A DNA stretch of 64,000 nt, from positions 1 to 64,000 of IMG/VR virus record IMGVR_UViG_3300036770_008729; one strand, written 5' to 3'. Below the pieces are notes generated by a model. That model was not told the origin of the DNA. It was given only the letters and a program-made list of their open reading frames with translations, and ran no database searches. Each line of letters begins with the position of its first letter. Position 1 is the first letter of the stretch. The translations under genes and the position numbers were made by a program. Positions 4,401 through 62,399 of this stretch are shown here, piece by piece.

Positions 4401-4472
4401 TGCGGGATAGAGCAGAGGAAGCTCGCAAGGCTCATAACCTTGAGGTCGGAGGTTCGATTCCTTCTCCCGCTA
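4401..4472 (+). tRNA. trnM: tRNA-Met(CAT), initiator-like
   Basis: Acceptor TGCGGGA/TCCCGCT with 1:72 mismatch; D-stem GAGC/GCTC (A11:U24); anticodon arm CAAGG-CTCATAA-CCTTG; T-loop TTCGATT. Confidence 0.92.
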
Positions 4473-4478
4473 CAATTG

Positions 4479-5453: not shown

Positions 5454-5559
5454 ATTAGCATATATATTAATAATTTGTTAACAACTTCATCATAAACAAA
5501 AATCTTTTACATGAAACAATTTGTATATTTGTAATTAAAATAAAAAAAACAAAAACAAT

Positions 5560-7074: not shown

Positions 7075-7152
7075 ATCTTTATATATTAATTTTCTCTTTA
7101 TTATATTTTTCGTTATTTCGATTGTGTTAAACAAAATTTGACAATTTTTATA

Positions 7153-10200: not shown

Positions 10201-13200
10201 CGGTACGAATGTTAATACATTGAATGCTACTCCAAGCGCAACTAGAGAATATAGAGTTGTTATAAATGATAGTAAATCTTGTTTGGTAACTTCATCTTCT
10301 CATACGGTTACTGTGGTTCCTGATCCTATAAATCCTACATTAAATACAAAGAGTCCAAATCAAAATGATATTTGTGTTGGTACTGGAGTATCTGCTACTT
10401 TTAATTCGGGTAGTGATGGTGTTGGTTGTCAAGATATTTTTCAATATTCAATAAATAGTGGAATTAGTTGGTCTAGTTATAATCCAGGAAATACAATTTC
10501 AACATCTGGTCTAACACAAGGAACGACTGTTCAGATTAGAGGTCGTAGAGGTAATTGTAGTACTGGTATAGGGTGTTCTAATAATGCTTATGATGTATTA
10601 GTTCAGTGGACTATAGTGACTCCTCCGATTCTTTCAACAAACGTTTCTGACGTAAGTTGTAATGGTGGAAATAATGGTAACATTAATCTTACCGTATCTG
10701 GATCTGTTGGTCCTTTCTCATTTAATTGGTCAGGTCCAAATGGATTTACTTCAACTCTTGAAGACCTATCAAATGTAGAGGCTGGTAGCTATACAGTTGT
10801 TGTTTCTACACCAAGTGGTTGTCAGTCTACTACTTCAATTACAGTATCTCAGCCAAGTAATATGGTATTAACTATTGTTGGTCAAAATGTTGCTTGTAAT
10901 GGTGGTAGTTCCGGTAATATCGACTTGACTGTTAGTGGTGGTACACCTACATATACTTATTCTTGGTCTAATGGTGAGACAACTGAAGATATATCAAATT
11001 TAAGTCCTGGCTCATATACTGTAAACGTTAGTGATGCGAACGGTTGTATTGCAACATCTACAGTGTCAATATCTGAACCTTCTTTACCAATTAGTTTATC
11101 AAATACAAATCAAAATGTCCTATGTAATGGTGGTAGTGATGGTTCAATTGATCTTAATGTATCTGGTGGTACACCAGGTTATACTTATTCCTGGTCAAAT
11201 GGACAAACATCAGAGGATATTTCTGGATTGATTGCGGGAACATATTCTGTTTTGGTAACAGATTTCAATGGATGTACATCTACACTTACAACTACAATTT
11301 TACAACCATCCGCTTTAAGTAGTTCTGTCGCTGTCTATAATGTAAATTGTTATGGTCAAAATACTGGTTCAATTAACTTGACTGTTTCAGGTGGGACACC
11401 TGGTTATACTTATTTATGGTCAAATGGGCAAACATCAGCTTATGCAACGGCATTGGGAGCTGGTACCTACTCTGTGTTAATAACAGATGTTAATGGTTGT
11501 CAATCAACTAATAATGCTACTATAACTCAACCTACTTTATTGGTTGCATCTCATACTAAGGTCAATCTTACTTGTTATAATTCAAATGATGGCTCTATAA
11601 CAGTTACTGCTTCTGGTGGTACACCTCCATATACTTATGGTTGGACAAATGGTATGACAGGATCTACTATTTCTAATTTACCAGCTGGTAATTACACATC
11701 ATATGTTTCTGATTCAAAAGGTTGTACTAAATTACAAACTATAAATGTCTCACAACCCTCTGTTCTTTCTTCAAGTGTTAATAGTCCTACAATATCAACT
11801 TGTCAGACAACACCAGTTGTTATTACAGCTTCTGTTATAGGTGGAACTGCTCCATATACATATTTATGGTCTACTGGAGCAACTACTAATACAATTTCTG
11901 TTTTACCTACACAAACTACATCTTATACTATTCAAATTACTGATTCTAAAGGATGTGTTAATAATAATATCGCTACGGTAACTGTCAGTCAAACGGTTGG
12001 ACTTCCTATTGTAGGTTCGGTTTCTGGACCAACACAGGCCTATAATTATATGTTAAATGGATCTTCTGCTACTTATTCAGTTAATCCTGTTCCTGGTGCT
12101 ACTAGTTATATTTGGTATATACCAAACAATGGCGTTTGGGTTATCGGTAATAACACATCAAATATATTGACTGTTCAATTTCAATCTTATTTCACTGGTG
12201 GTGATTTTTATGTTGCAGCTCTTGATGGTTGTTCTATTAGTTATTCTGATACATTAAATGTTTCTATTTTAGATAATCCAATTATTGCCGGTTCATCTTG
12301 TGGAATACCTTCGGGTTCAATAAAGACCTACTATGTTTCAAATTCAATTCCTGGTTTAACTTATAATTGGACACCACCTTATGGTTCGGTCATTCTTTCT
12401 GGTCAGGGTAATGATACTGTTCAAATTAAATATAGTTCTTATTTTCAATCACAATCTCAATTATATGTTAATACATCTACGATATATGGTGTATTCACCG
12501 GGGAAAAGGAAATACTAAGAAACGCTTCATCACCAACTGCGATTTTAGGACCTCAATCTATTTGTGCGGATGGAACAACTATTTATGAATATTATGTTGA
12601 TTCTGTGGCTACTGCTACATCCTATATTTGGGGTGTGCCAAATGGAGTTAGTATCGTTAGTGGTCAAAGTAATGATACCATTCAGGTTAGATTTAGTACT
12701 TCATATATTGGTGGTAATTTTAGCGTGATGTCTGTAAATCAATGCGGATCTTCTCCTATGAGATATGGAACAGTTTCTAATAGTAATCAACAATTTTATC
12801 CTGGTACTATTTCTGGGCCAGGTGATCTGTGTCCTTATTTAGGAACTACAGTTACTTATAGTGTTCCTCTATCCGCAGGTTATACATATACTTGGTTAGC
12901 TCCTTCCGGTATGACAATTTTATCAGGTCAGGGAACAAATATAATAACATTACAAGTATCTAACTCTTTTACTTCTGGAACTTTGAGTGTGAAATTAAAT
13001 GAAGGTTGTGGTGATAGTCCATATTCTACTCGTAGTCTTTCAACTCAACAAACAAATATATCAGTTTCTCAAATACAAGGATTAACAAACCCTTGTTCAA
13101 TTGTTGGTACTGGTCAAACAACAACATATAGTATCACACCAATAAGTGGTGTAAACTATAACTGGTCTGTTCCGGTAAATGCTACAATAGTTTCTGGTCA

Positions 13201-14227
13201 AGGTTCAAATGTAATTAGTGTTAGTTTTCAATCCGGTTTTTCTGGAGGTGTGATAAGTGTGTTAGTTTCTGGTGGTTGTGCTAGTCCAATAACTGTGTCT
13301 AAAACTTTATCACTTGGATATCCTTCAATGACAATTCAGGGCACAAGATGTGTTGAAAATGGTTGGTCTTATAACTACTCGGTTTCTTTTCCTAGTATGG
13401 CTTATTATTATAATGTTCAGAGTTATACTTGGGTTCCACCTGCAAATGCAGTTGTTAGTAGTGGTCAGGGAACTCAAAGTGCGACTATAACTTATCCTTC
13501 AAACTTTGAGTCCAATTGTACAAACAATATGTGTGACTCAATTAAAGTATATGTTCAGTTTCCTTGTGGTGTGAAATTGGTAAAAATGAAAATTGGTATG
13601 ACAACTTATGCTGCTAGCTCAATTATTGGTCCACCTTCAACTTGTGGTCCAGATACTGTTATGTTGAATGTTGCGGTTCCTACACCAGTAAGAGCAACTG
13701 GTTATATTTGGGGTTATCCAAATGGTGCTCAATTTTTAAACCTTAATGGTGGTGGGTCTTCAAATGATACTATTTTTGCAAAGATTAATTCTACTTACTT
13801 TGGTGGTAGTTTTAGTGTTATGAGTTTTAATCAATGTGGTTCAACTCCAATGAGATATTTTACCTTACCAAAGGTTTGTCCTACTGCTATTATTATAAAT
13901 AATGATCCTGAGATATCTACTGATATAATAACTACGATGAATGATATTCTTTCGGATCCAGAATATTTGGAAAATCAAAAAAGACCTTTGGATTTTATAA
14001 CTTATCCAAATCCTGGTCAAAACATAATAAATCTTAGAATATTTAAAGGAAATTCACCTTACTATTTGATTCAAATAACTAATTTGATTGGTCAAAATGT
14101 TTATGCCAAATTACATGAGGCTGAAGATGTTATTGATATTTCTAAATTTGAAGAAGGAGTATTCTTTATTTCAATTCAGGATAATGAAGGAAATAAATTA
14201 ACTAAACAATTAGTTATTGAGAGATAA
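7250..14227 (+). CDS. Large T9SS type A sorting-domain surface protein (Gly-rich domain, FN3-like repeats, Ig, SprB repeats, PKD-like domains)
   Basis: Signal peptide ending SFS-Q; two FN3-like units (LSW..VS.A.SYDVYFGT...YYWK.V); SprB repeats (VxCNGGxxGxIxLTVSGGTPxYTYxWSNG); PKD-like units; C-terminal YPNP...N.IGQ....IDIS....G.FFI.I......T..LVIE. Confidence 0.9.
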   Translation: MMMKFFKYIFLSLITLLSINSFSQTAMPASGTNVGASSGSWLVPANVYSIEIDAWGGGGAGAGKSTSGTGGLAGGAGGSRSTTTISVTPGQIIYFRVAASRPGTTGNAANGNDTWVNKSLNSAPTSSTDGVVAKGGASAVGTAAGVGSTTGCIGTSNQGGSGRVGGVTAGGGGSGAGTNLDGNDATGTAGATAPAGGGNGGNGHSSGGAGSAGSIPGGGGGGAYKNNNTSRSGGAGAAGRVILTYLAIPNCASLNAPSNNSTGISTNQVLSWAAVSGATSYDVYFGTSSTPPFVINQTGTSYTPTLSYSTQYYWKVVAKNSAGDALSCSTWNFTTKDPGCLSATYGQYPSTTYTPSCMGTVENITTTGYASEYSVVSLQNGETYTFSSSNSTDFITISNSAGTTVLAYGTTPVSWTSNLTGNVRFYTHTNEACGSSTTGRTRRVQCSIPPLCTSLISPSDGSTGQSIGTQLSWQSVSNANSYDVYFGTSSNPPFIQNQTGTTYSPSLSYNTTYYWKIVPKSSVGSATGCSVWSFTTGGPGCLNSTYGQYPTSVYNPGCTGTPENITTAGYAGEYSMVTLISNVNYTFSSSVATDFITISDELGTTILAYGTGSVSFTCLTDGNYRFYTHTDNACGSSSTSRVRRIQCSTPPPPANDLIANAQDVGLCGGSFNGNTKFATNSGDGPSCWTAPSENWTAPGVWYTVVGNGQNITASLCGSNYDTKLFIYTGTPGSLTCLTYNDDFCSTQSQVTFSSTLNTTYYMLVTGYGSAKGAFTFSVSLDPSVPVISTNPTNSTICPGSSWTFSVIASGNQGPLSYQWYLDGNVISGATQSTYDASTAGTYYVIVSNSCGATTQSSNATLSLFTLPTITVNSPEICFGNSTTIIASGGTSYSWSTGATTSSISVSPISTTNYIVTGTDVNGCQNTATSTVTVNPNPLVSLNTLSSTICSGGSGTNNITATPSSGNPTYNYQWQYFNGTSWVNTGTNVNTLNATPSATREYRVVINDSKSCLVTSSSHTVTVVPDPINPTLNTKSPNQNDICVGTGVSATFNSGSDGVGCQDIFQYSINSGISWSSYNPGNTISTSGLTQGTTVQIRGRRGNCSTGIGCSNNAYDVLVQWTIVTPPILSTNVSDVSCNGGNNGNINLTVSGSVGPFSFNWSGPNGFTSTLEDLSNVEAGSYTVVVSTPSGCQSTTSITVSQPSNMVLTIVGQNVACNGGSSGNIDLTVSGGTPTYTYSWSNGETTEDISNLSPGSYTVNVSDANGCIATSTVSISEPSLPISLSNTNQNVLCNGGSDGSIDLNVSGGTPGYTYSWSNGQTSEDISGLIAGTYSVLVTDFNGCTSTLTTTILQPSALSSSVAVYNVNCYGQNTGSINLTVSGGTPGYTYLWSNGQTSAYATALGAGTYSVLITDVNGCQSTNNATITQPTLLVASHTKVNLTCYNSNDGSITVTASGGTPPYTYGWTNGMTGSTISNLPAGNYTSYVSDSKGCTKLQTINVSQPSVLSSSVNSPTISTCQTTPVVITASVIGGTAPYTYLWSTGATTNTISVLPTQTTSYTIQITDSKGCVNNNIATVTVSQTVGLPIVGSVSGPTQAYNYMLNGSSATYSVNPVPGATSYIWYIPNNGVWVIGNNTSNILTVQFQSYFTGGDFYVAALDGCSISYSDTLNVSILDNPIIAGSSCGIPSGSIKTYYVSNSIPGLTYNWTPPYGSVILSGQGNDTVQIKYSSYFQSQSQLYVNTSTIYGVFTGEKEILRNASSPTAILGPQSICADGTTIYEYYVDSVATATSYIWGVPNGVSIVSGQSNDTIQVRFSTSYIGGNFSVMSVNQCGSSPMRYGTVSNSNQQFYPGTISGPGDLCPYLGTTVTYSVPLSAGYTYTWLAPSGMTILSGQGTNIITLQVSNSFTSGTLSVKLNEGCGDSPYSTRSLSTQQTNISVSQIQGLTNPCSIVGTGQTTTYSITPISGVNYNWSVPVNATIVSGQGSNVISVSFQSGFSGGVISVLVSGGCASPITVSKTLSLGYPSMTIQGTRCVENGWSYNYSVSFPSMAYYYNVQSYTWVPPANAVVSSGQGTQSATITYPSNFESNCTNNMCDSIKVYVQFPCGVKLVKMKIGMTTYAASSIIGPPSTCGPDTVMLNVAVPTPVRATGYIWGYPNGAQFLNLNGGGSSNDTIFAKINSTYFGGSFSVMSFNQCGSTPMRYFTLPKVCPTAIIINNDPEISTDIITTMNDILSDPEYLENQKRPLDFITYPNPGQNIINLRIFKGNSPYYLIQITNLIGQNVYAKLHEAEDVIDISKFEEGVFFISIQDNEGNKLTKQLVIER

Positions 14228-14855
14228 ACTTTTTGTCAATTATAGCAAATGAGAAATGTTGTTTTGGTGGTAAAAAAACTATAGTTTTATCTAAAATACC
14301 TTCAAGTTTTTTTCTAATCTTATCCATGACAGATATGACATTGTCATACAAAGTTACATTCAGGTTTGTTTTTTGAACAAAAACAAAACAAGGAATCCAC
14401 CCTGAATTCAATAATTCTGGAATTTCTCTACTTTCTTCTTTTATTTTATCCTTAAAGTAACTAGAAATTGTAGGATTTTCAAACACACGAACCCAATCCA
14501 ATTTTTGATGTTTCATGCTCAATCCAACAAGAGCAGCATTAATAGATTTGAGGTACTTTAAGTCACCAATATTATTATTATTAAAATAGTCTTCAGTTCT
14601 TAAAAATTTTGTACTTAAAGTCTCACCGTTACATACTAAGTTTTGAAATCCAACTCCTGGTTTTAATAGGTAAGGACTTAAATAACCAATTGAAAATTCA
14701 GGAAATAAATCTTCTAAATCAACCAAACAATCAAAAGTATCTTCTATATTTAAATCATCAAAAGCACTTTCGATTATTTCAATACCGGATTCACAATCTT
14801 GAAGTTCAAGCTGTTCAATAAAATTATATCTTTCAAAAGTTTTGATGTATTTCAT
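14214..14855 (-). CDS. Hypothetical protein with N-terminal tag (MKYIKTFERY)
   Basis: 213-aa ORF starting 3 nt after the neck-like gene. Confidence 0.75.
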   Translation of the reverse strand: MKYIKTFERYNFIEQLELQDCESGIEIIESAFDDLNIEDTFDCLVDLEDLFPEFSIGYLSPYLLKPGVGFQNLVCNGETLSTKFLRTEDYFNNNNIGDLKYLKSINAALVGLSMKHQKLDWVRVFENPTISSYFKDKIKEESREIPELLNSGWIPCFVFVQKTNLNVTLYDNVISVMDKIRKKLEGILDKTIVFLPPKQHFSFAIIDKKFISQ

Positions 14856-17095: not shown

Positions 17096-17143
17096 GACTT
17101 ATATATTAAATTGATAATTCTATTTAAATTTCTTCTAAATTAT

Positions 17144-18639: not shown

Positions 18640-18694
18640 TATTACAGAATTGGGTATATACAATTTGTAAAATTTACAAATTAATATATACCCT

Positions 18695-19471
18695 ATGAAG
18701 TATTTGAGAACTTTTATAGAAAATGCCGTTCCAGTAATTGGTGGAAACAAAGAATATAGAATGCAAAGTTTACCTCACAAAGGTGATCCAATAGCTTCTG
18801 ATGGTAAGATTTCTATTTTACAACAAGATTGGTTTGAAAAACTATTGCCAGATACATTAAAAGTGTCTTGTGATCCAAGATTATTTAAATTGAATTTTGA
18901 CCAATCATTAACTCCGGTTGAAAAAAAAGACTTTATTTTTGAAAAAAATGATTGTGCAATTAATAAAAGTATAATTCAGTTTAATTATTGGATGGTTCCT
19001 GATCATAATCCTGGTGAGGAATTAGAAGATGGTGAACCTTCTTGTATTGAATTTGATATATGTTCAGTTAAAACCTTAGAAGGTATAAAATTAATAGTGG
19101 ATATCACACATGGTGAAGACATTACTTTTCAGTTCTCAATTGAACCTCCTAATAAAATAAATGTTGGACATTATACCGGTGTTGGTTCTCTTTATGATAA
19201 TAAAACACATTTCGGATTCAAAGATGAATCAGTTAAGGATCTAGTTAATTTTTTTAATGCCTTCGATCATGGAATTAAATTGACCCAGAAAGATTTAGCA
19301 TTTTTAGATGAACATAGAGATAGTTATAAACATGATGTATTTAATAAAAAACATAACTATACTGATGATTCTGACTTGCTTAAATTTGGAAATTCCATGA
19401 AAGACAATGAGCCAAGTTTGAAAAATGTTCAATCATTCAGTAACTTTAATCCATCTACCATCAGTAAGTAA
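18695..19471 (+). CDS. Hypothetical protein with N-terminal tag (MKYLRTFIEN); paralog of 6571-7074
   Basis: 258 aa; TAATATATA at 18682-18690, 4 nt before the ATG. Confidence 0.75.
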   Translation: MKYLRTFIENAVPVIGGNKEYRMQSLPHKGDPIASDGKISILQQDWFEKLLPDTLKVSCDPRLFKLNFDQSLTPVEKKDFIFEKNDCAINKSIIQFNYWMVPDHNPGEELEDGEPSCIEFDICSVKTLEGIKLIVDITHGEDITFQFSIEPPNKINVGHYTGVGSLYDNKTHFGFKDESVKDLVNFFNAFDHGIKLTQKDLAFLDEHRDSYKHDVFNKKHNYTDDSDLLKFGNSMKDNEPSLKNVQSFSNFNPSTISK

Positions 19472-19819: not shown

Positions 19820-19903
19820 TACTATTTCATATATAAATTATTCATTTAGTTTAATTTTATAATTCAAAAAAATTTATTATATTTGTCATTAATATATAAT
19901 ATA

Positions 19904-23432: not shown

Positions 23433-23448
23433 AAATGTATATATTAAT

Positions 23449-25237: not shown

Positions 25238-25271
25238 TCAATTATAGTTGTTTTTTTTAATATATACAACT

Positions 25272-26172: not shown

Positions 26173-26246
26173 CGCGGGTTAGAGAAGAGGCCTATCTCAT
26201 TTGGCTCATAATCAAAAGATCGGAGGTTCGAATCCTCCACCCGCTA
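26173..26246 (+). tRNA. trnM: tRNA-Met(CAT), initiator-like with atypical anticodon stem
   Basis: Acceptor CGCGGGT/ACCCGCT (C1:U72 mismatch); D-stem GAGA/TCTC; anticodon arm TTTGG-CTCATAA-TCAAA; T-arm GGAGG-TTCGAAT-CCTCC. Confidence 0.88.
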
Positions 26247-26249
26247 CTG

Positions 26250-55178: not shown

Positions 55179-55319
55179 TTTGCTTTTTATTTTTTTAATT
55201 TTCAAATCCATAAGATTTGATATTTGTTATATAGTTACTAATCAATAAAGTTTAATAAAATGTTAATTGTTTTTACTGAAAAAGTTACTAATAAATATAT
55301 ATCAAAAATTAAATTTGTT

Positions 55320-56282
55320 ATGGCTAAAAAATTTAAAATATTATCAATCGATGGTGGTGGTCTTAGAGGTATTGTTCCACTTCTTATTCTTAGAGAAATC
55401 GAAAATAAAACAGGTAAAAGAATTCACGAATTGTTTGACCTTATTACAGGAACATCTACTGGTGGCATTATTGCATGTGGTTTATCTTGCACAAAAGATG
55501 GCAAATCACCAGCAATTACTGTAGAAAAATTAATTGAACTCTACACTGCTGAAAGAGAAACAATTTTTCCATATAAAAGAAACTTCTTTCAAAAAATAGG
55601 CAGCGGTATTAATTCTTTATTTAATCCTAAGTTTTCACCAGATGGACTTGATCGTTTATTAACTGAATATTTTGATGATATGAGATTAAGTAATACATTA
55701 GTTCCAATTATTGTTACTTCTTATGATATCAAAAATAATGAAGTTGTAATGTTTAAAAGTAGAAGAAGTGGTGAGATTGGATATAACGCACTACTTAAAG
55801 ATGCTTGTAGATCAACATCTGCTGCTCCTACATACTTACCTTCCTATAAATTGGCTTTTGGTGGAAAACAAAGAGTTCTTATTGATGGTGGTGTTTATAT
55901 TAATAACCCTGCTCTTGGATCGGTATCTGATGCTTTAAGAAGCACTAAAGGATTAAAGATTTCCGATATAGAAGTTCTTTCACTTGGAACTGGAACTTAT
56001 CCAGCTGAGTTAGGGAAAAAAGATACTCCATCTTGGGGTTTAGTAAATTGGGCACAACCGATAACAAATATAATGATGCAAGCCACTTCTAATGCGACTG
56101 AGTATGAATGTAATGAGTTACTGAAAAAACATTTAAGAATACAATTAAAAATAGATGATCCTAAAATGACCGATATGTCAGATTCAAGACCTGGAACAGC
56201 TCAGTATATCATTGATAAAGTGGGTTCAGATATAATAAATAATAGTGAGATAATGAAAAAATTAGATGACTTTCTTAAATAA
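55320..56282 (+). CDS. Patatin-like phospholipase
   Basis: ILSIDGGGLRG, GTSTG nucleophile, STSAAPTYLP, IDGG; track start 55260; TAAATATATA at 55292-55301. Confidence 0.9.
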   Translation: MAKKFKILSIDGGGLRGIVPLLILREIENKTGKRIHELFDLITGTSTGGIIACGLSCTKDGKSPAITVEKLIELYTAERETIFPYKRNFFQKIGSGINSLFNPKFSPDGLDRLLTEYFDDMRLSNTLVPIIVTSYDIKNNEVVMFKSRRSGEIGYNALLKDACRSTSAAPTYLPSYKLAFGGKQRVLIDGGVYINNPALGSVSDALRSTKGLKISDIEVLSLGTGTYPAELGKKDTPSWGLVNWAQPITNIMMQATSNATEYECNELLKKHLRIQLKIDDPKMTDMSDSRPGTAQYIIDKVGSDIINNSEIMKKLDDFLK

Positions 56283-57033
56283 GATAGCTTGTAATTTCTT
56301 TAGTTATATCATTATTAGAATTGATTAAGTTTTTGTAAGTTTTATCATCTACCTTTACAAAGATTGGATTAAATCCAATATAAGTAATCACTTCATTGCC
56401 AAATGGCAGTTCTCCTTCAATGTAATCTTCTAACCAAAATTCTTTATATGGTCTCCAACCAGTAGCTTTATAGATTCTTATTAAAGAATCTATAACTATT
56501 TGTTTATTTTCTATAGAGAAGTTTCCACAATTAATGTTGATATAAGGAACCGCTGGTATTTTCCCATTTTCTATATTATCGACAAAAAGTTGCAATGTTG
56601 GTTTATGTGGCAATTTATTTAATTTACTTAAGTAAATAGCTTCCTCAACCTCGTTAAAATCAACTTCTTCTTCTATAATTTTTTTTGAATTTAATTCGTC
56701 GGGTCTTAGAAATATACTACCATATGTTTCATCATATATCAATTCACATTTTTTATTTTGCCAATCATCTGGATTAACTGACATTTCGTATGATATAGCA
56801 CTTCTAATCTCTCTTTTATATGTGTGTAGAATTTCATATTTTGGATATATAAAGTATCCTGAAGAAATAAAATTTGCCTTACTTATTATATTATCATCTG
56901 ATAAATCAAAAAGTAACTCTTGAAAATCTCTAAAATCAGGAAACTGACTTTTAGTTATGGCAAAATCGGCTAAATGTCTAGTATCAGAATTATTAATTTG
57001 TTCAAATAGTTTATATGGCCTAATATGCTTCAT
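56275..57033 (-). CDS. Hypothetical protein with N-terminal tag (MKHIRPYKLFE)
   Basis: 252 aa; last gene of the tagged array. Confidence 0.75.
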   Translation of the reverse strand: MKHIRPYKLFEQINNSDTRHLADFAITKSQFPDFRDFQELLFDLSDDNIISKANFISSGYFIYPKYEILHTYKREIRSAISYEMSVNPDDWQNKKCELIYDETYGSIFLRPDELNSKKIIEEEVDFNEVEEAIYLSKLNKLPHKPTLQLFVDNIENGKIPAVPYININCGNFSIENKQIVIDSLIRIYKATGWRPYKEFWLEDYIEGELPFGNEVITYIGFNPIFVKVDDKTYKNLINSNNDITKEITSYLI

Positions 57034-57914
57034 TAATAGTTGAGTAATATTTTTATTGTATAATCATAAATATCTGTATTTGTGAATTGTCTAGTTCCCC
57101 TAGCGTGGTCAAAAATAACATCACTATAATCTAAAGTAGTGAGTATAGATGGTAAAACTTTATCAAATTGACTTTCTAATTCTATTAAGTTCATCTTTCC
57201 TTTCATATAATTATCACCTTGACCAATTTCTATTACTATACAAGGTACATTCATTTCAATAATCTTATCTATTGAGTAACTTCTCTTCTTATCAATATCT
57301 GAATTATGAATAACTGAATATTTACCATTTGATGTTTCAAAAGAATCACCTGATTTAAATCCATAGTTATCAATATTAAAGTTAGCACATTGCCATTTTG
57401 GTTCTGTGACATAATAACTTTCATCACTTTGCCTCATTAAAACTGAAGGATATGAACCAATGTAAAATGTTGGAAAAGCAATATCTTTTATAATATGAAT
57501 CATAGCTCTGAAATAATCTTTCTCATCTCTATTTCTAACTGTTAGAATTCCATTATATTTATATTGAATTTCTTTGTTATAATTATCTGAATCTCCATAA
57601 GCGATACAAGTTGATACCCATTTAGATTTTTCATGTGGTAAATTATCAAATACATCCATAAGTAATCTATCTTCTACATAATAAACATCTACTTTATTTA
57701 GAGCCGTGAATATTCTATCTACATGATTTTTTATCTTATTATAGTAACCATCCCCAATAAAATGATTTGTCCATTTTTCTAAATCTTTAATTGGTTTTCT
57801 ACCCCACTCAAAATCTTTAAGATCTTCAATCCAATCATGAATTCCGTATTTAGAATCTAATCCAATATTCATATTTTCATTTATAAAGTGATTATATTTC
57901 TTAATTATTTTCAT
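57033..57914 (-). CDS. Hypothetical protein with N-terminal tag (MKIIKKYNHFINE)
   Basis: 293 aa, overlaps its neighbours. Confidence 0.75.
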   Translation of the reverse strand: MKIIKKYNHFINENMNIGLDSKYGIHDWIEDLKDFEWGRKPIKDLEKWTNHFIGDGYYNKIKNHVDRIFTALNKVDVYYVEDRLLMDVFDNLPHEKSKWVSTCIAYGDSDNYNKEIQYKYNGILTVRNRDEKDYFRAMIHIIKDIAFPTFYIGSYPSVLMRQSDESYYVTEPKWQCANFNIDNYGFKSGDSFETSNGKYSVIHNSDIDKKRSYSIDKIIEMNVPCIVIEIGQGDNYMKGKMNLIELESQFDKVLPSILTTLDYSDVIFDHARGTRQFTNTDIYDYTIKILLNY

Positions 57915-58191
57915 AGATTTTATTTATTAAAATTGCTAAATTAATATCTTTTTCTGTAACAATATCACCAGAATCATGCGTTGAAAGAGTTACAATAACT
58001 TTGTCAAACATCCATTCAATTTTTGGATGATGATTTTGTGATTCTGATTCTGTTGCCACTTGATTAATAAATTGTCTCGCTGATTCAAATGAATCAAAAG
58101 TAAACTCACTGGTTAATTTTTTACCATCATTTTTCCAACTTTTTAAATCTTCAGTTGATTCATATATTCTATAAGATTTTAGGTGCTTCAC
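57901..58191 (-). CDS. Pterin-4-alpha-carbinolamine dehydratase-like protein with N-terminal tag (MKHLKSYRIYE)
   Basis: W......L...F.F.SF..A..F...V....E..NHHP.I......V...LSTHD.G..VT.KD..LA. Confidence 0.85.
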   Translation of the reverse strand: MKHLKSYRIYESTEDLKSWKNDGKKLTSEFTFDSFESARQFINQVATESESQNHHPKIEWMFDKVIVTLSTHDSGDIVTEKDINLAILINKIYENN

Positions 58192-58631
58192 TTTCTAAAA
58201 ATTATTTTAATGGATTGGTTTTCTGCCATCCATTGACCAACTTCTAAATCTTCAAGTTCTATTTTCTCTACATTATCTTCTGATGGATCTGAACTGTATT
58301 CATCTTGTAAAAGTATTGTATATTTCCAATCTTTCATAAACTCAATAGACCTTCTAATACAATCCATTAATTCTGTAGATATTTGAACTTCTCTATAATC
58401 TGATACGTATTCTTCATCATCATCAAATCCAGGATCGAAATCTCTATGATATGGTTCTTCATCTCCAAATGAAATATAAACTGTGTAGTAATTAGATATA
58501 TCATCACCATCTGCCCAAGCAATCCACTCTTCATCAGGATGACTATGTTTAACATCTAAAAAGATGTCTTCTAAATCAGCTTTGATTCTATCAAAGTTCT
58601 CGAATAACTTATATGTTTTTAAATGTTTCAT
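58188..58631 (-). CDS. Acidic hypothetical protein with N-terminal tag (MKHLKTYKLFE)
   Basis: 147 aa, 4-nt overlaps with neighbours. Confidence 0.75.
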   Translation of the reverse strand: MKHLKTYKLFENFDRIKADLEDIFLDVKHSHPDEEWIAWADGDDISNYYTVYISFGDEEPYHRDFDPGFDDDEEYVSDYREVQISTELMDCIRRSIEFMKDWKYTILLQDEYSSDPSEDNVEKIELEDLEVGQWMAENQSIKIIFRK

Positions 58632-58879
58632 TTCTCTTCTCTTCTCTTCTTCATTAAATCTTTAATAAATTCTTTTATCTCATCATTGCAATCTGGAGTA
58701 GGTAAGAAGCCATATCCTCTCATTCTTGATGACCATTTGATCTGACCAATAACCTGACCATCTTTACTAACATTATAAGTATCGGTTTTAGCACCTTTCT
58801 TTTTAGTTTGTAAAGTGAACTTTAATTTAGAAACTTCTTTTTTAGTTTCAAATAATTTATATGTCTTTAAATGTATCAT
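58628..58879 (-). CDS. Basic hypothetical protein with N-terminal tag (MIHLKTYKLFE)
   Basis: 83 aa. Confidence 0.72.
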   Translation of the reverse strand: MIHLKTYKLFETKKEVSKLKFTLQTKKKGAKTDTYNVSKDGQVIGQIKWSSRMRGYGFLPTPDCNDEIKEFIKDLMKKRREEK

Positions 58880-58902
58880 TTGAAAAGTTTTAGATGTTTC
58901 AT
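58876..58902 (-). other. 8-codon minigene consisting only of the tag (MKHLKLFK*)
   Basis: ATG AAA CAT CTA AAA CTT TTC AAA TGA; 4 nt downstream of TAATATATA (58907-58915); its TGA overlaps the next ATG. Confidence 0.55.
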
Positions 58903-58926
58903 AAAGTATATATTAAATACACAAAA

Positions 58927-59460
58927 TTAAATACTTAATTCAACCTTTTCTCCAGATGGGGGTGAGAAAGAAACACTTTTCAAGTTATTAAACTTATATT
59001 TATCGTCTAAATTTATATAATTTTTACCAGTACCTTTATTTACATAGCAAATTGTTATGTGTGGTTTGTAATCGGGATAAGATTCTTCATTCGGTAGTGT
59101 TTTTAACATATCATGTAGCTTCTGTAAATCAGGAGTTTTCTTAACATTAAACTTAACTACATCATAATCTTTATTCTCGAATAAATCTATACCTTCAATT
59201 TCTATGTTTAGTGGTTTTGCAAATGAGGTCAAAATCTCTTGAACTTGTTCTGATGTTACTTCTGGTTTTAATCCATATAATAAAGTCAAATGTGGAAAAT
59301 CTTCTATACCCTGATTTTCCTCTGGATTATAAATATCTTCTTTTTTTATTTTAGAAGTTATTTCATCCCAATTTGTGAAAGGAATCTTTAACATCGCACA
59401 ACCAAATTCGTGCTGACCTGATGATTCTTTAATAAACTGTATATAACTTTTTATCCTCAT
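58927..59460 (-). CDS. 2H phosphoesterase (Acb1/gp57B or LigT-like) with N-terminal tag (MRIKSYIQFIKES)
   Basis: Two HxT motifs, PHLTLLYG and YKPHITICY; ATG 59460 gives an ATGA overlap (track start 59487). Confidence 0.8.
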   Translation of the reverse strand: MRIKSYIQFIKESSGQHEFGCAMLKIPFTNWDEITSKIKKEDIYNPEENQGIEDFPHLTLLYGLKPEVTSEQVQEILTSFAKPLNIEIEGIDLFENKDYDVVKFNVKKTPDLQKLHDMLKTLPNEESYPDYKPHITICYVNKGTGKNYINLDDKYKFNNLKSVSFSPPSGEKVELSI

Positions 59461-59996
59461 ACTGCTCCTTGTATTATTATTCTCCACTCACCACCTTTAT
59501 TATTATAAGAAAATTTAAAATAAACTCCTATTTCAGATTGTATTCTTTTTACTGCTACTAAAAAGTCATCAAATTCCTGTGTAATCTTTTTTCTTCTTTT
59601 ATCTTGTTCGGCCATTTCTAACTCAGCCTCTTTTTTAGTCATTACATCTATCGATGGATTATCTTCAAATTCCATTTCTTGAGAGTCCCAAGTTATTTCA
59701 CCATCTGATGATATTCTACCAGTCATATCTACAAATTCTGTTCTTGCTCCTGATGTGATATAAACATCTTCCTTTGGCATCATTCTACAATTAAAATTAG
59801 GAAATCCCCAAATAGAAATTGACATATCATCACCAGACCAATCGGTTCTATTTTCAATCCAACTCCATCCATTATCTTCAAATTCTATGAAACATTCTTT
59901 AATTGTATCCAATACCTGCTGATACACTTTACGCATGTGAATTGCATATGGATGAGTTTCTTCAGTATTTTCATTAAATCTTTTTAAATGTTTCAT
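59457..59996 (-). CDS. Hypothetical protein with N-terminal tag (MKHLKRFNEN)
   Basis: 179 aa. Confidence 0.75.
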   Translation of the reverse strand: MKHLKRFNENTEETHPYAIHMRKVYQQVLDTIKECFIEFEDNGWSWIENRTDWSGDDMSISIWGFPNFNCRMMPKEDVYITSGARTEFVDMTGRISSDGEITWDSQEMEFEDNPSIDVMTKKEAELEMAEQDKRRKKITQEFDDFLVAVKRIQSEIGVYFKFSYNNKGGEWRIIIQGAV

Positions 59997-60012
59997 TTCA
60001 TATATTTATTAA

Positions 60013-60933
60013 TTATTCTAATCCTAATTCTTGGAGTATTTCATGCAATTTATCTATTTTTATCATTATTGCTTCATCCTCAAACCATGATTCTAAACCT
60101 TCACCTTCATATTCAAAATCATCATCTAAATCAGCATATAATTTCATTGTTGAGATTACATCACCTAATTTAAATTTATTGAATACAGGGTCTAGTATCT
60201 TATTAAGATTTCCTAAAAGTGAAAGACTATTATCCCACAATCTTCCAAAGTATTTTGTTTTGATAGCATCACTAACTTTACAGGTATCTAGATAAGTTTT
60301 TAATTTATTCCAATCAGGATTTACATAAGTTTTAGTCCAGTTTGGAGTTAGCTGGTTTCCAAGTTTATCAAATCTATCTATACGAGTTTCTATATGAGCG
60401 TAATCTCTTAAAACTCCTAAGTCACTTAATAAAGAAGATGTATATCGAAAGAGAGAAGGTCTTCTCATATCTTCTTCTCTAAATGCGGCTTTATTTGGTA
60501 TTTTACCAAAACAATTCCAGAAATCACCTCTATCACCAGTGGCGACTTTTGTTGTATCAAAAGGAATGACTACATAATCGACAGATTTACCTTTTACAAA
60601 TCCTGCACCATGTGTGAAAGCTCTTCTTGAAGAAGCGCAACATAAACCTTTATTTCTTCTCGGCCAACCTTTCCACGAGTCTAAGTTGGAAGTAAGTGTA
60701 TTATGAACATCGTTTGATGAGTATGGGTCTATTCTAAGAGATGTTGATGACTTTGGATCTACTAAAACAAAATCACCTCTATTTTCATCTTTTCTTAAAA
60801 TAAGAACATCATCAGTATAATCATCACCCCAAGATAAAAACTTTTTGCAATTTTGTTGCAATATTTTTACTACTTCTTCTTTAGTGAGAATAGTTGATTT
60901 TAAAGTTTCATTAAATCTTCTTAAATGTTTCAT
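60013..60933 (-). CDS. Hypothetical protein with N-terminal tag (MKHLRRFNET)
   Basis: 306 aa. Confidence 0.75.
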   Translation of the reverse strand: MKHLRRFNETLKSTILTKEEVVKILQQNCKKFLSWGDDYTDDVLILRKDENRGDFVLVDPKSSTSLRIDPYSSNDVHNTLTSNLDSWKGWPRRNKGLCCASSRRAFTHGAGFVKGKSVDYVVIPFDTTKVATGDRGDFWNCFGKIPNKAAFREEDMRRPSLFRYTSSLLSDLGVLRDYAHIETRIDRFDKLGNQLTPNWTKTYVNPDWNKLKTYLDTCKVSDAIKTKYFGRLWDNSLSLLGNLNKILDPVFNKFKLGDVISTMKLYADLDDDFEYEGEGLESWFEDEAIMIKIDKLHEILQELGLE

Positions 60934-61631
60934 TTTAGGTATTTATCAAAAACTTCTTCAATTTTTGGTTCTAATTTTGTATAATCTATATCAAATGTTT
61001 TGGGCATAATAGATACTATCTCATCTATGTTATATGGCTCTTTTCCAATAGTATACCAACTTCTATTCTTTTTCATCCATAGATAAAAAAGAATATAAGC
61101 ATTTGATTTTTGAATATATTCTTCAGTGTCAATTATTTTATCTAATGACCATTTCTTAATTTTTTCAACAGTTCTTTTTTCACAATCAACTTCTATATCA
61201 ATAGATGTTCTTATTTCCTCGGCAATTACATTTAGATCAACATCCTCTTTTCCAGCCAACCATTCATCAGTTTGAACTAATCCTATATTATTAGTCCAAG
61301 TAGGATCGTTTTCTAAAAACTGATCCATGTGAGATGATTCGTGTAATAATATAAGAAGCCAATAAGATATATCTTTTCCCATAGCACAAGCTAGAAGTCT
61401 ATTATCTCCATCAAAATAACCATTACAAAATATATTTGGTCCTCCTAAAGAAACACCTTTTTCAGGTGATAGAAAAAGCTTAATGTTATTTTCTTTGGCA
61501 AAGTTTTTTAAGTGGTCAATAAATAATTTAACTTTTTCAATCTCTTCTTTTGTTAATTTACCAAAGTTAAACTCACCACCGTGTGGATTATCTATTTCCT
61601 GAAAGTCTTCAAATAATTTTAAGTATCTCAT
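60930..61631 (-). CDS. Putative HExxH metallopeptidase-like protein with N-terminal tag (MRYLKLFEDF)
   Basis: LLILLHESSHMDQ, downstream EVDCE; TAATATATA at 61638-61646. Confidence 0.65.
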   Translation of the reverse strand: MRYLKLFEDFQEIDNPHGGEFNFGKLTKEEIEKVKLFIDHLKNFAKENNIKLFLSPEKGVSLGGPNIFCNGYFDGDNRLLACAMGKDISYWLLILLHESSHMDQFLENDPTWTNNIGLVQTDEWLAGKEDVDLNVIAEEIRTSIDIEVDCEKRTVEKIKKWSLDKIIDTEEYIQKSNAYILFYLWMKKNRSWYTIGKEPYNIDEIVSIMPKTFDIDYTKLEPKIEEVFDKYLK

Positions 61632-61655
61632 AAAAGCTATATATTAAAATAAAAA

Positions 61656-61675
61656 AACCATCTATAAAGATGGTT
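61656..61675 (-). terminator. Intrinsic terminator separating the methyltransferase from the tagged-gene array
   Basis: AACCATCT-ATAA-AGATGGTT hairpin with a T-run on the minus strand. Confidence 0.7.
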
Positions 61676-62399
61676 CTTCTAGTCTAAGATTAGCTAACTC
61701 ACAATACTCTTTAGTAATGTCAAATCCGACATACCTTCTGCCTAACTTATTGGCGACTGATGTAGTTGTTCCACTGCCATTAAATGGATCAACCACAACT
61801 CCGCCAATGTAAGAGTGCATCTTAATACATCTTTTAGCCAACTCTTCCGGAAAGGGAGCTGGGTGTTTTCTTTTCTTAGCACTTTCTGGTGCGATTACCC
61901 AAAGACCATTTGTCCAGTTAATGAACTCTTCTTTAGTTAAGTCGGTTTGACCTTTCTCAACTATCTTTGGAGAACCTTTATGAAAATTAATAATCATCTC
62001 AAAGGGTGGAAGAATTCTTGGATTGCTTGGACTCATCCAACTACCCCAGGCAGTTCTTTTAGGAATCTGATTTTTATTCCAAATAATAAACTCTCTAAAA
62101 GTAAATCCAGCTTCTTGAAATAACCTTGTGAATGTTGAGTAACTTGGTTCATTCAATTGAGATTGAAAGCAACCAATTTGTAGGCAAAATCTACCACCAT
62201 CTTTTAATACACGGAAGCTTTCGGAAATCCAAACTTTACACCATTCATAATAAGCCTCTAACTTCATAGAGTCATCATGGTCTTGATAACTGATATTAAG
62301 ATTGTATGGTGGTGAAGTAAAGATTAAATCAACAGAATTATTTTCCATTGATTTGAAACCTGAGATGCAATCCTGATTGTATATTTTATTAAATTCCAT
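61662..62399 (-). CDS. Orphan amino (N4-C/N6-A, beta-class) DNA methyltransferase
   Basis: DLIFTSPPYN (motif IV) precedes HPAPFP...VVDPFNGSGTT (motif I). Confidence 0.9.
   Translation of the reverse strand: MEFNKIYNQDCISGFKSMENNSVDLIFTSPPYNLNISYQDHDDSMKLEAYYEWCKVWISESFRVLKDGGRFCLQIGCFQSQLNEPSYSTFTRLFQEAGFTFREFIIWNKNQIPKRTAWGSWMSPSNPRILPPFEMIINFHKGSPKIVEKGQTDLTKEEFINWTNGLWVIAPESAKKRKHPAPFPEELAKRCIKMHSYIGGVVVDPFNGSGTTTSVANKLGRRYVGFDITKEYCELANLRLEEPSL

What the first reader, a model, noticed from the sequence alone, without database searches (positions are those of the whole stretch)
58927..59460. Acb1-like 2H phosphoesterase carrying the tag: possible pre-loaded cyclic-nucleotide eraser
Seen: two HxT motifs (PHLTLLY, KPHITICY) and a tag N-terminus. 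Known: Acb1 (T4 gp57B) is a 2H phosphoesterase that cleaves CBASS cyclic nucleotides, but other 2H members are RNA ligases or cyclic phosphodiesterases. Inference: if packaged, it would act from the moment of injection, before phage gene expression.
Basis: partly seen in the sequence, partly recalled or inferred. Interest (0 to 1): 0.7.

Follow-up and report, generated by a model that had tools for sequence, protein, structure and literature searches.

The report
Phage 2H phosphodiesterase with CTS-like N-terminus
A 281-kb uncultivated phage encodes an intact two-histidine (2H) phosphodiesterase, related to the anti-CBASS enzyme Acb1 and to 2H modules of injected 'polyvalent' phage proteins, inside an array of genes whose products start with a peptide resembling the phage T4 capsid-targeting sequence; delivery with the virion is plausible but unproven and its substrate is undecided.

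Summary
The ORF is real: window 58927-59460, minus strand, 177 aa, with HLT (57-59) and HIT (134-136). It folds as a 2H phosphoesterase (AF2 pLDDT 91). It is not a clear Acb1 member. Pfam's catch-all PF13563 scores 48.9 bits and Acb1 28.7 bits over half the model. It lacks the Acb1 C-terminal lid. Predicted viral structures place it with Colly_1-type and polyvalent-protein 2H domains, ahead of Acb1. Profile comparison still puts it nearer Acb1 than E. coli ThpR, and the YPDYxPHITxxY block is shared.

The tag is real genome-wide: 63 of 408 N-termini against 3 of 794 controls. An HMM built from it ranks T4's three CTS-bearing internal proteins first among 90 T4 ORFs. The target's own N-terminus is only a weak match (4.5 bits). 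It may equally be an intrinsic helix or a lid, as in PDE-9.

Close relatives are fused to ADP-ribosyltransferases, CCA-type nucleotidyltransferases and RNase T. This supports virion delivery but also an RNA 3'-end-healing role. Substrate and packaging need experiments.

The parts
58927..59460 (-). 2H phosphoesterase ORF of 177 aa, the only 2H gene in the 281-kb genome
   Evidence: ORF list and sequence. Pfam PF13563 48.9 bits and PF23474 28.7 bits. AF2 pLDDT 91 with a 2H fold. Single PF13563 hit in the genome.
59422..59460 (-). Codons 1-13, MRIKSYIQFIKES: the N-terminal amphipathic helix, read as a weak tag variant with a putative I-K-E|S cleavage site
   Evidence: Conserved in all close orthologues. 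Tag-HMM score 4.5 bits. Helix 6-14 has low pLDDT and precedes strand 1. Absent from the Colly_1 orthologue and from polyvalent forms.
59284..59292 (-). First catalytic HxT motif (H57-L-T59)
   Evidence: Read from the sequence. H57 is invariant and T59 nearly invariant in 85 sequences. Aligns to Acb1 H44/T46.
59053..59061 (-). Second catalytic HxT motif (H134-I-T136) within the YPDYKPHITICY block
   Evidence: Read from the sequence. H134 is invariant. Aligns to Acb1 H113/T115, with Y128 on F107 and Y131 on Y110.
56275..61631 (-). Array of nine contiguous, mostly overlapping genes whose products all start with the tag or a variant; the target is the fourth
   Evidence: ORFs and N-termini. Tag-HMM scores of 12-23 bits for eight of them. 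Only the Pterin_4a-like gene at 57901-58191 has a Pfam family.
61638..61647 (-). TTAATATATA promoter-like motif upstream of the first gene of the array
   Evidence: 9 matches in the window against 2.0 expected, and 0 of 100 shuffles reach 9; every match lies just upstream of a gene start. Genome-wide positional bias.
58907..58916 (-). Second TTAATATATA motif, in the 47-nt gap just downstream of the target's stop codon, ahead of the next tagged gene
   Evidence: ORF coordinates.

Best explanation
The gene encodes a catalytically competent, metal-independent 2H (HxT/HxT) phosphodiesterase. It belongs to the phage clade whose other members are solo proteins or modules of large 'polyvalent' proteins predicted to be injected with phage DNA. 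Here it is a stand-alone protein. It is the last gene of a four-gene unit inside a nine-gene array of proteins that begin with a T4-CTS-like peptide. The most likely mechanism is as follows, and each step is inferred rather than shown. The N-terminal helix (residues 1-12) targets the protein to the assembling prohead. It is probably removed after Glu12 at an I-K-E|S site. The mature enzyme enters the host with the DNA. There it cleaves a ribose-linked phosphodiester through a 2',3'-cyclic phosphate intermediate. The substrate I favour slightly is a host cyclic-oligonucleotide immune signal, degraded with Acb1-type chemistry. What is shown: the ORF, the catalytic tetrad, the fold, the family relationships, the existence and T4-CTS likeness of the genome-wide tag, and the fusion partners of relatives.
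For: The catalytic tetrad is intact and conserved, and the 2H fold is predicted confidently. Profile comparison places the family nearer Acb1 than E. coli ThpR. The Acb1 base-stacking positions W74 and F107 stay aromatic as F94 and Y128, and the YPDYxPHITxxY block is shared (with residue roles from PMC9117128). The closest multi-domain relatives, at E 1e-26 to 1e-33, carry ART-PolyVal or ADPrib_exo_Tox, NUDIX and GNAT domains. One of them sits 4.5 kb upstream of a gp25-type baseplate gene. BFVD structural neighbours include proteins named 'putative structural protein' and 'capsid morphogenesis protein'. Iyer et al. 2017 (PMC5512222, section 20) predicted that such 2H domains and their solo counterparts are injected and degrade nucleotide signals or act as RNases. 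The tag marks 63 of 408 N-termini against 3 of 794 controls. Its codons vary synonymously, so the peptide rather than the DNA is conserved. Its HMM ranks T4 IPI, IPIII and IPII as the top 3 of 90 T4 ORFs (T4 sequences). In 52 of 60 tags the first Glu lies at position 8, 9, 11 or 12, and P3 is hydrophobic in 46 of 59. Phages that carry the 2H inside a polyvalent protein have no tagged neighbours, while solo 2H genes in tag-rich phages almost all have the Y..F[IL].E N-terminus.
Against: No packaging data exist, and no capsid protease, scaffold, major capsid protein or portal of any known family was detected in the genome. The target's own tag score is weak at 4.5 bits. Solo homologues in tag-poor loci also carry an N-terminal helix, of other sequence, so the helix may be intrinsic to the solo enzyme or a lid, as in 2H PDE-9 (bioRxiv 10.1101/2025.08.21.671373). 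The Acb1 C-terminal lid with W147 and E141 is absent. Structure searches do not favour Acb1: VIA Z is 11.4 against 12.5-13.7 for Usb1, YjcG, LigT and AKAP18, and Acb1 entries rank 31st or lower in BFVD. Recurrent fusion to CCA-type nucleotidyltransferase and RNase T points to RNA ends as the substrate. About 60 packaged species would far exceed any described CTS system.
Confidence: 0.35

Rival explanations
1. RNA 3'-end healing. The enzyme hydrolyses 2',3'-cyclic phosphate ends left on tRNA or other RNA by host metal-independent defence RNases. It would work with the phage's own tagged CCA-type nucleotidyltransferase, its tagged P-loop kinase and its Rnl1 ligase. This would be a tRNA repair kit, whether packaged or not.
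For: 6 of 20 multi-domain relatives join this 2H clade to PolyA_pol/PolyA_pol_RNAbd (CCA-adding type), in both domain orders. The LR745206 orthologue (50% identity, syntenic) and P0122 are 2H plus RNase_T fusions. HAD_SAK 'RNA repair' phosphatase genes lie next to or near relatives. The genome encodes a tagged PolyA_pol-head protein (95934-97094), a tagged AAA_33 kinase (242296-243606) and a T4-type RNA ligase 1 (80772-82040). The best Pfam and PHROG matches are the '2'-5' RNA ligase' type. Iyer et al. 2021 (PMC7824862) assign jumbo-phage 2H enzymes to the clearing of cyclic 2'-3' ends.
Against: hhalign probability against E. coli ThpR is only 4.9%, and PF02834 falls just under its cut-off. 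Domains in polyvalent proteins are often functionally unrelated, and Iyer et al. 2017 never saw this 2H type next to RNA ligases (PMC5512222, section 20). The gene is not adjacent to the ligase, kinase or nucleotidyltransferase in this genome. No RNase_T or HAD_SAK gene was found here.
Confidence: 0.3
2. Same enzyme, but the N-terminus is not a delivery tag. Residues 1-18 would be an intrinsic amphipathic helix or substrate lid of solo members of this clade, like the N-terminal lids of 2H PDE-9 and the penguinpox cGAMP PDE. The protein would be made after infection and act in the cytoplasm. Its resemblance to the genome-wide tag would be coincidental or secondary.
For: Solo homologues in 15 tag-poor loci also have a 13-25-aa N-terminal helix ahead of strand 1. 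The target scores only 4.5 bits with the tag HMM. The correlation between the 2H tag score and neighbour tag density is weak (Spearman 0.35, p 0.04). VIA alignments to 9q2g and 9bkq extend to model residues 5 and 1. PDE-9 uses residues 1-15 as a lid (bioRxiv 10.1101/2025.08.21.671373).
Against: The helix is absent from Colly_1, from many representatives and from all polyvalent forms, so it is not needed for the fold. Orthologues carry fully canonical tags in the same place. In tag-rich loci 16 of 18 have the tag-like motif, against 4 of 15 in tag-poor loci. The gene sits inside a nine-gene run of tagged genes.
Confidence: 0.3
3. The enzyme acts on another substrate class known for 2H proteins: 2'-5' oligoadenylate-like signals, ADP-ribose 1''-2'' cyclic phosphate, or 3'-end trimming of a host RNA in the manner of Usb1.
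For: The highest VIA Z-scores are to Usb1, at 13.3-13.7. Iyer et al. 2017 raised Usb1-like RNase and 2'-5' oligoadenylate cleavage as options for this clade. Two of seven structural groups tested by Doherty et al. cleaved none of 18 messengers.
Against: Sequence identity to Usb1 is 9% and the Z-scores are nearly flat across all 2H families. No contextual evidence is specific to these substrates.
Confidence: 0.1

Closest known systems
Acb1 (T4 gp57B, Erwinia phage FBB1; PF23474; PDB 7T26/7T27)
   Same: 2H fold and HxT/HxT tetrad. The [FY]xDYxPHITxxY block around the second His is shared. Aromatic residues sit at the W74 and F107 positions. Both are phage-encoded small solo proteins. hhalign probability is 96%, and the Pfam Acb1 model just passes its cut-off.
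   Different: No C-terminal lid, W147 or E141. An N-terminal extension takes its place. The core is larger by about 20 residues. Cys21 is nearly invariant where Y12 would lie, which is my reading and not an alignment result. True Acb1 proteins hit only PF23474, whereas this family hits PF13563 better. Acb1 entries rank 31st or lower among viral structure matches. Acb1 is not known to be packaged, although T4 57B lies next to ipI.
2H PDE-9 of Burkholderia phage BCSR5 (PDB 9Q2G/9Q2Y; Doherty et al. 2025 preprint)
   Same: A phage 2H PDE with a roughly 15-residue N-terminal segment ahead of the core. The profile hit has E 5.6e-4 and VIA Z is 11.4, with the alignment reaching model residue 5.
   Different: Identity is only about 14%. 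The PDE-9 N-terminus is a demonstrated lid, not a motif shared with dozens of other proteins of its phage.
2H modules of polyvalent proteins (Iyer et al. 2017, PMC5512222)
   Same: These are the nearest sequence relatives outside the orthologues, at 40-50% identity. They combine with ART-PolyVal, NUDIX, GNAT and nucleotidyltransferase domains and lie in a structural-gene context. They are predicted to be injected and to degrade nucleotide signals or act as RNases.
   Different: Here the domain is a separate 177-aa protein with its own N-terminal peptide. The genome has no ART-PolyVal or NUDIX gene.
LigT/ThpR and YjcG RNA 2',3'-cyclic phosphodiesterases
   Same: Fold and size. VIA Z is 12.4-13.3. 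PF13563 is the best Pfam match, and the Pyrococcus PH0099 profile hit equals the Acb1 hit at 26 bits.
   Different: hhalign probability against E. coli ThpR is 4.9%. The motifs read HxTLLYG and HITICY rather than the HxTLxF.G and HxTLxR I recall for LigT (own knowledge). These are cellular, untagged proteins.
T4 internal proteins IPI, IPII and IPIII with the capsid targeting sequence
   Same: A short conserved N-terminal peptide (M-K-x-hydrophobic-K/Q-x-F...E) sits on otherwise unrelated small proteins. A hydrophobic-x-Glu site follows it. This phage's tag HMM ranks the three IPs first of 90 T4 ORFs. According to PMC3012670 the IPs are counter-defence proteins.
   Different: About 60 bearers (15% of genes) against 3-4 in T4. 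Most are acidic. No T4-type protease, scaffold or capsid genes are detectable. Packaging and cleavage are untested.

Membership tests
2H phosphoesterase superfamily | Two HxT/S motifs | tested here: met
   H57-L-T59 and H134-I-T136. The His residues are invariant and the Thr residues at least 90% conserved in 85 sequences.
2H phosphoesterase superfamily | Bilobed 2H fold | tested here: met
   AF2 pLDDT 91.3 and pTM 0.85. VIA Z is 10-13.7 to Usb1, LigT, CPDase, AKAP18, Acb1, viral PDEs and VP3.
Acb1 (PF23474) | Family HMM above the curated cut-off and the best family for the protein | tested here: inconclusive
   28.7 bits against a cut-off of 27, covering only model positions 60-113 of 144. 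PF13563 scores 48.9 bits. 76 of 85 family members hit Acb1 at E<1e-3, and 84 of 85 hit PF13563.
Acb1 (PF23474) | C-terminal lid (residues 145-152) with W147, plus the adenine-reading E141 | tested here: not met
   The protein ends in a confident beta-strand at 173-176 with no aromatic residue. The hhalign alignment stops at Acb1 residue 121. Feature definition from PMC9117128.
Acb1 (PF23474) | Base-stacking aromatic residues Y12, W74 and F107 | tested here: inconclusive
   W74 aligns to F94 (invariant) and F107 to Y128. The F94 position is also aromatic in LigT. The Y12 region was not aligned.
Acb1 (PF23474) | Nearest structural and sequence neighbour is Acb1; reciprocal retrieval | tested here: not met
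   A T4 Acb1 search returns only PF23474-only proteins and none of this family. Acb1 entries rank 31, 33 and 46 in BFVD at TM 0.45-0.59, against 0.72-0.80 for Colly_1-type proteins.
Acb1 (PF23474) | Cleavage of 3'3'-cGAMP or cA3 3' of adenosine to a 3'-phosphate product | not testable with these tools
   This needs a biochemical assay. The one complex-prediction job with 3'3'-cGAMP was not folded.
LigT/ThpR RNA 2',3'-cyclic phosphodiesterase | LigT_PEase (PF02834) repeats above the cut-off; profile similarity to ThpR | tested here: not met
   PF02834 scores 23.0 bits against a cut-off of 23.3. hhalign against E. coli ThpR gives probability 4.9%. The archaeal LigT PH0099 does tie with Acb1 at 26 bits.
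Polyvalent-protein 2H clade (Iyer et al. 2017) | Close homology to 2H modules embedded with ART, MuF, NTase and similar domains | tested here: met
   40-50% identity and E 1e-26 to 1e-33 to domains inside proteins of 583-2332 aa. Partner domains come, and the baseplate-gene context.
Polyvalent-protein 2H clade (Iyer et al. 2017) | Being part of a multi-domain polypeptide | tested here: not met
   It is a 177-aa single-domain protein, a 'solo counterpart' in the wording of that paper.
T4-type CTS-bearing internal (packaged) proteins | Short conserved N-terminal peptide shared by unrelated proteins and resembling the T4 CTS | tested here: met
   This holds for the genome: 63 of 408 N-termini against 3 of 794 controls, and the T4 IPs are the top 3 of 90. 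The target itself is weak at 4.5 bits.
T4-type CTS-bearing internal (packaged) proteins | Hydrophobic-x-Glu protease site after the peptide | tested here: met
   The target reads I10-K11-E12|S13. Among 60 tags the first Glu lies at position 8, 9, 11 or 12 in 52, and P3 is hydrophobic in 46 of 59. That the T4 protease motif is L/I-x-E is my own knowledge.
T4-type CTS-bearing internal (packaged) proteins | Prohead protease and scaffold of the T4 type in the genome | tested here: inconclusive
   PF03420, PF07068, PF07230, PF04586 and PF05065 gave no hit, and for two of them the controls rang nowhere. tblastn with T4 head proteins found nothing.
T4-type CTS-bearing internal (packaged) proteins | Presence in virions with a processed N-terminus | not testable with these tools
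   No cultured relative with the tag was found; PTm1 has none. No RNA or proteome data exist, and all sequencing runs that hold the region are DNA.

The most novel reading that the evidence does not exclude
The N-terminal peptide (M-K-[YH]-[LI]-K-x-[FY]..E and variants, including the one on this 2H enzyme) is a capsid-targeting and ejection address used on about 60 proteins, roughly 15% of the genes, in this phage. It is also used widely in uncultivated AT-rich phages. If so, the injected effector repertoire can be read straight from sequence. That repertoire would be an 'unbundled polyvalent protein': 2H phosphodiesterase, CCA-type nucleotidyltransferase, kinase, HExxH peptidase, pterin dehydratase-like protein and dozens of unknowns, all acting before any phage gene is expressed.
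Probability: 0.3. Interest if true: 0.85.

Novelty: new variant of a known kind. Interest (0 to 1): 0.55.

Why it matters
Phage 2H phosphodiesterases are established counter-defence enzymes, and injected 2H domains were predicted in 2017, so the enzyme alone is a modest addition. The context is what could matter. A short, T4-CTS-like N-terminal peptide marks about 60 otherwise unrelated proteins in this phage, and it recurs at ORF starts in at least 117 IMG/VR stretches. If it is a packaging signal, it would give a sequence-only way to list pre-loaded effectors in huge uncultivated phages. It would also show that enzymes such as this 2H, which other phages carry inside giant polyvalent proteins, can be delivered as separate tagged cargo. 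That idea is directly testable by virion or metaproteomic mass spectrometry and by reporter fusions.

Tried and rejected
1. Foldseek on PDB and on Swiss-Prot AFDB gave flat scores across all 2H families and did not discriminate.
2. I looked for the head-assembly machinery, to test a tag-protease or tag-scaffold link. tblastn with 27 T4 proteins found nothing below E 0.02. Pfam S77, Gp23, Portal_T4, S78 and HK97 capsid gave no hit. A PHROG scan of 20 large ORFs found only a baseplate wedge, a tail-spike-like protein and a 'virion structural protein' shared with cyanomyophages. The protease remains unidentified.
3. Complex prediction with 3'3'-cGAMP was not folded and gave no verdict; it is not evidence either way.
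4. A literature search for the tag peptides found no papers.
5. The cultured Flavobacteriia jumbo phage PTm1 was tried as a proxy with possible proteomics. None of 57 ORFs in its first 50 kb carries the tag.
6. No RNA run holds the region, so no transcript ends could be read.
7. The atlas search of three tagged neighbours returned only viral hypothetical clusters, plus a weak Peptidase_M78 lead.
8. No RNase_T, NUDIX, ART-PolyVal or HAD_SAK_1 gene was detected in this genome.
9. I considered that the tag is a nucleotide-level element such as a translation enhancer or recombination site. I rejected this as the main explanation because the codons vary synonymously.
10. I could not establish that the TTAATATATA motif is a late promoter. 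It precedes one verified structural gene and several unknowns, but also some enzyme genes.
11. The search for related loci with the 85-sequence alignment failed for lack of a conserved stretch. It worked with the 27-sequence alignment.
Full report
**What is there.** The window is the first 64 kb of a single 281,114-bp virus record with 30% G+C and an estimated completeness of 94%. Near-identical sequence occurs in subsurface, freshwater and lake metagenomes from several studies. The finding's coordinates hold a minus-strand ORF. Orthologues all begin at the Met encoded at 59460, which gives 177 aa starting MRIKSYIQFIKES. This ATG overlaps the stop of the upstream gene as ATGA. The upstream GTG at 59487 is not supported.

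**It is a 2H phosphoesterase.** Pfam gives PF13563 (2_5_RNA_ligase2) at 48.9 bits and PF23474 (Acb1) at 28.7 bits against a cut-off of 27, with the Acb1 hit covering only model positions 60-113. AKAP7 and LigT_PEase fall just under their cut-offs. PHROG 755, 'RNA ligase', matches at 4e-11. The family is large. More than 160 near-full-length homologues share 45-97% identity, and 4523 cluster representatives score E<1e-3 in the exhaustive library. In an 85-sequence alignment H57, F94 and H134 are invariant. C21, D42, P56, T59, G63, D100, K103, Y131, P133, T136, G143 and Y148 are at least 90% conserved. The AF2 model is confident (pLDDT 91.3, pTM 0.85) except for residues 1-20. Those residues form a helix at 6-14 ahead of strand 1. 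It is the only 2H gene in the genome.

**Is it Acb1-like?**
- Structure does not decide. VIA Z-scores are nearly flat: Usb1 13.7, YjcG 13.3, PH0099 LigT 13.2, plant CPDase 12.8, E. coli LigT 12.6, AKAP18 12.5, penguinpox cGAMP PDE 11.8, Acb1 11.4 (131 of 137 residues aligned) and PDE-9 11.4. Foldseek E-values are flat too.
- Among predicted viral structures the best matches are a protein of more than 1000 aa from an uncultured phage, Maribacter phage Colly_1 (TM 0.74/0.80) and Myoviridae 'cyclic phosphodiesterase' proteins. Large actinophage proteins named 'putative structural protein' and 'capsid morphogenesis protein' also appear. Acb1 entries come at ranks 31, 33 and 46.
- Sequence profiles do lean toward Acb1. 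The family profile hits Acb1 7T26 and Pyrococcus LigT equally, at 26 bits each. hhalign against a 17-sequence Acb1 alignment gives probability 96% and E 4e-9 over 81 columns. Against single sequences it gives 86.7% for T4 Acb1 and 4.9% for E. coli ThpR.
- The alignment puts F94 on Acb1 W74, Y128 on F107 and Y131 on Y110. The block YPDYKPHITICY nearly repeats FBB1's YPDYRPHITLSY. W74 and F107 stack on the nucleobases in the Acb1-cGAMP complex (PMC9117128).
- Against membership: the Acb1 C-terminal lid (145-152, W147) and E141 have no counterpart, and the protein ends in a confident strand. True Acb1 proteins hit only PF23474, and a T4 Acb1 search does not retrieve this family.
- I therefore file it as an Acb1-related but distinct clade, not as an Acb1 member.

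**The tag is a real, genome-wide feature.**
- An HMM built from 53 seed N-termini scores >=8 bits on 63 of 408 predicted N-termini, against 3 of 794 internal-Met controls.
- It scores >=8 bits on 0 of 57 ORFs in 50 kb of the AT-rich phage PTm1, and on none of the ORFs in the Colly_1 fragment or the polyvalent-protein contigs.
- Lys, Tyr, Leu, Ile, Phe, Glu and His codons inside the tag vary synonymously, so the peptide is what is conserved.
- In 52 of 60 clean tags the first Glu lies at position 8, 9, 11 or 12. The residue two before it is hydrophobic in 46 of 59. The next residue is mostly S, N, E or D.
- Bearers have a median length of 182 aa and tend to be acidic: 70% have pI below 6, against 43% of other proteins. 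They lie in tandem runs of up to seven genes by the strict criterion.
- The target sits in a run of nine such genes, 56275-61631.
- The few bearers with a recognisable domain are this 2H, a Pterin_4a-like protein, a PolyA_pol-head (CCA-type) nucleotidyltransferase and an AAA_33 kinase.
- The syntenic locus of the 634-kb uncultured phage LR745206 has 10-11 tags in 16.5 kb.
- The exact MKYLKLFE coding pattern occurs in at least 117 IMG/VR stretches. In the 80 stretches read, 75 of 79 matches lie at ORF starts.

**The tag resembles the T4 capsid targeting sequence.** I took T4 IPI, IPII, IPIII and gp57B from the T4 record. IPII and IPIII start MKTYQEFIAE and IPI starts MKTFKEF. This phage's tag HMM, run on all 90 ORF N-termini in 65 kb of T4, ranks IPI (9.2 bits), IPIII (5.3) and IPII (5.2) first, second and third. 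In T4 this peptide is the only conserved part of a diverse set of counter-defence proteins, and it loads them into the scaffolding core (PMC3012670). That the T4 protease cuts after L/I-x-E is my own knowledge. The likeness is a shown fact. Shared function is an inference.

**Does the target carry the tag?** Only partly.
- MRIKSYIQFIKES scores 4.5 bits, close to T4 IPII and IPIII but below the 8-bit line. Orthologues bridge it to canonical forms at 11.0 to 18.8 bits.
- The extension is dispensable for the fold. Colly_1's protein begins eight residues before strand 1. Many representatives start at the core. In polyvalent proteins the domain is internal.
- Among 35 distinct solo homologues from IMG/VR, 18 lie in tag-rich flanks (3-10 tagged neighbours within 10 kb on either side), and 16 of those 18 have the Y..F[IL].E N-terminus.
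- Fifteen lie in tag-poor flanks. They still have an N-terminal helix, usually of another sequence, and only 4 of 15 match the motif. The rank correlation is 0.35 (p 0.04).
- So a helix ahead of strand 1 is general for solo members. It could be a lid, as shown for residues 1-15 of 2H PDE-9 (bioRxiv 10.1101/2025.08.21.671373). It could be a tag, or both.

**What relatives say about function and delivery.** Of 20 multi-domain relatives scanned, six combine this 2H with PolyA_pol/PolyA_pol_RNAbd. Four combine it with ADP-ribosyltransferase domains: ART-PolyVal three times, and ADPrib_exo_Tox plus NUDIX once. Others carry GNAT or ABC1 domains. One ART-PolyVal + 2H + PolyA_pol protein lies 4.5 kb upstream of a gp25-type baseplate gene, and another lies next to a HAD_SAK_1 gene. 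The LR745206 orthologue and P0122 are 2H + RNase_T fusions. Iyer et al. 2017 proposed that polyvalent proteins are injected with the DNA. They also proposed that their 2H domains and solo counterparts act as RNases or degrade nucleotide signals (PMC5512222). Iyer et al. 2021 assign jumbo-phage 2H enzymes to cyclic-phosphate clearing in RNA repair (PMC7824862).
- These data raise the odds of virion delivery for this clade.
- They split the odds on substrate. ART partners and Acb1-like motifs favour immune-signal erasure. CCA-type nucleotidyltransferase, RNase T and HAD partners favour RNA 3'-end healing, as does this phage's own tagged nucleotidyltransferase and kinase plus its Rnl1.

**Verdict.**
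- I put about 0.35 on a packaged signal-erasing phosphodiesterase and about 0.3 on RNA-end healing.
- I put about 0.3 on the N-terminus being an intrinsic helix or lid with no packaging. That last question cuts across the substrate question.
- The enzyme is a new variant of a known kind. The tag system around it is the more unusual feature and deserves its own follow-up.

Noticed in passing
whole genome G000; in the window at 6571-7074, 14214-14855, 18695-19471 and 56275-61631: About 60-70 of roughly 408 predicted genes start with M-K-[YH]-[LI]-K-x-[FY]..E or a variant. Most have no Pfam or PHROG family, tend to be acidic and lie in tandem arrays. The same peptide starts ORFs in at least 117 IMG/VR stretches and in the 634-kb phage LR745206. 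I found no paper that mentions it.
   Followed up: partly
window 5461-5470, 7080-7089, 17100-17109, 18681-18690, 19889-19898, 23438-23447, 25257-25266, 58907-58916, 61638-61647: TTAATATATA occurs 9 times against 2 expected, always just upstream of a gene start. Genome-wide, AATATATA ends 4-6 nt before the ATG of many genes and is found within 60 nt of 26 of 53 tagged and 61 of 355 untagged genes. The spacing suggests a promoter for very short-leader or leaderless mRNAs, reminiscent of the T4 late promoter TATAAATA. Its temporal class is unknown.
   Followed up: partly
window 60930-61631 (-): The first gene of the tagged array encodes a 233-aa protein with an HExxH motif (LLHESSH) and a weak language-model lead to Peptidase_M78. 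It may be a tagged metallopeptidase; peptidases are common modules of polyvalent proteins.
   Followed up: partly
window 57901-58191 (-): A 96-aa pterin-4a-carbinolamine dehydratase-like protein (PF01329, 2e-22) carries a canonical tag, MKHLKSYRIYES, in place of the usual N-terminus. Its role in a phage is unclear.
   Followed up: no
L001 8001-9317 (LR745206.1): The syntenic orthologue in a 634-kb uncultured phage is a 438-aa fusion of the tagged 2H domain with an RNase_T-type DEDD exonuclease. Other orthologues of about 300 aa carry an unrecognised C-terminal domain.
   Followed up: partly
L003 13592-14411 (T4 NC_000866): In T4 the acb1 gene (57B, still annotated 'RNA ligase') lies directly next to ipI, the gene for the packaged anti-restriction internal protein.
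   Followed up: no
window 55260-56282 (+) and 61662-62399 (-): A patatin-like phospholipase (PF01734) and an N6/N4 DNA methylase (PF01555) flank the tagged array.
   Followed up: no
window 7250-14227 (+); also genome 66270-70763 and 117360-120977: These very large proteins (2325, 1497 and 1205 aa) have N-terminal signal peptides of the kind common in Bacteroidota secreted proteins, which hints at the host phylum. I did not check them for T9SS sorting domains.
   Followed up: no
window 4401-4473 and 26173-26247: Two tRNA-Met (CAT) genes.
   Followed up: no
genome 267953-269173 (L026): A 406-aa 'virion structural protein' (phrog_1645, 9e-125) shares 52-56% identity with proteins of marine T4-like cyanophages and of podovirus HMO-2011. 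It appears to be a widely exchanged structural module.
   Followed up: partly
genome 80772-82040, 95934-97094, 242296-243606: A T4-type RNA ligase 1, a tagged PolyA_pol-head (CCA-type) nucleotidyltransferase and a tagged AAA_33 kinase are scattered in the genome. Together they could form an RNA-repair set.
   Followed up: partly
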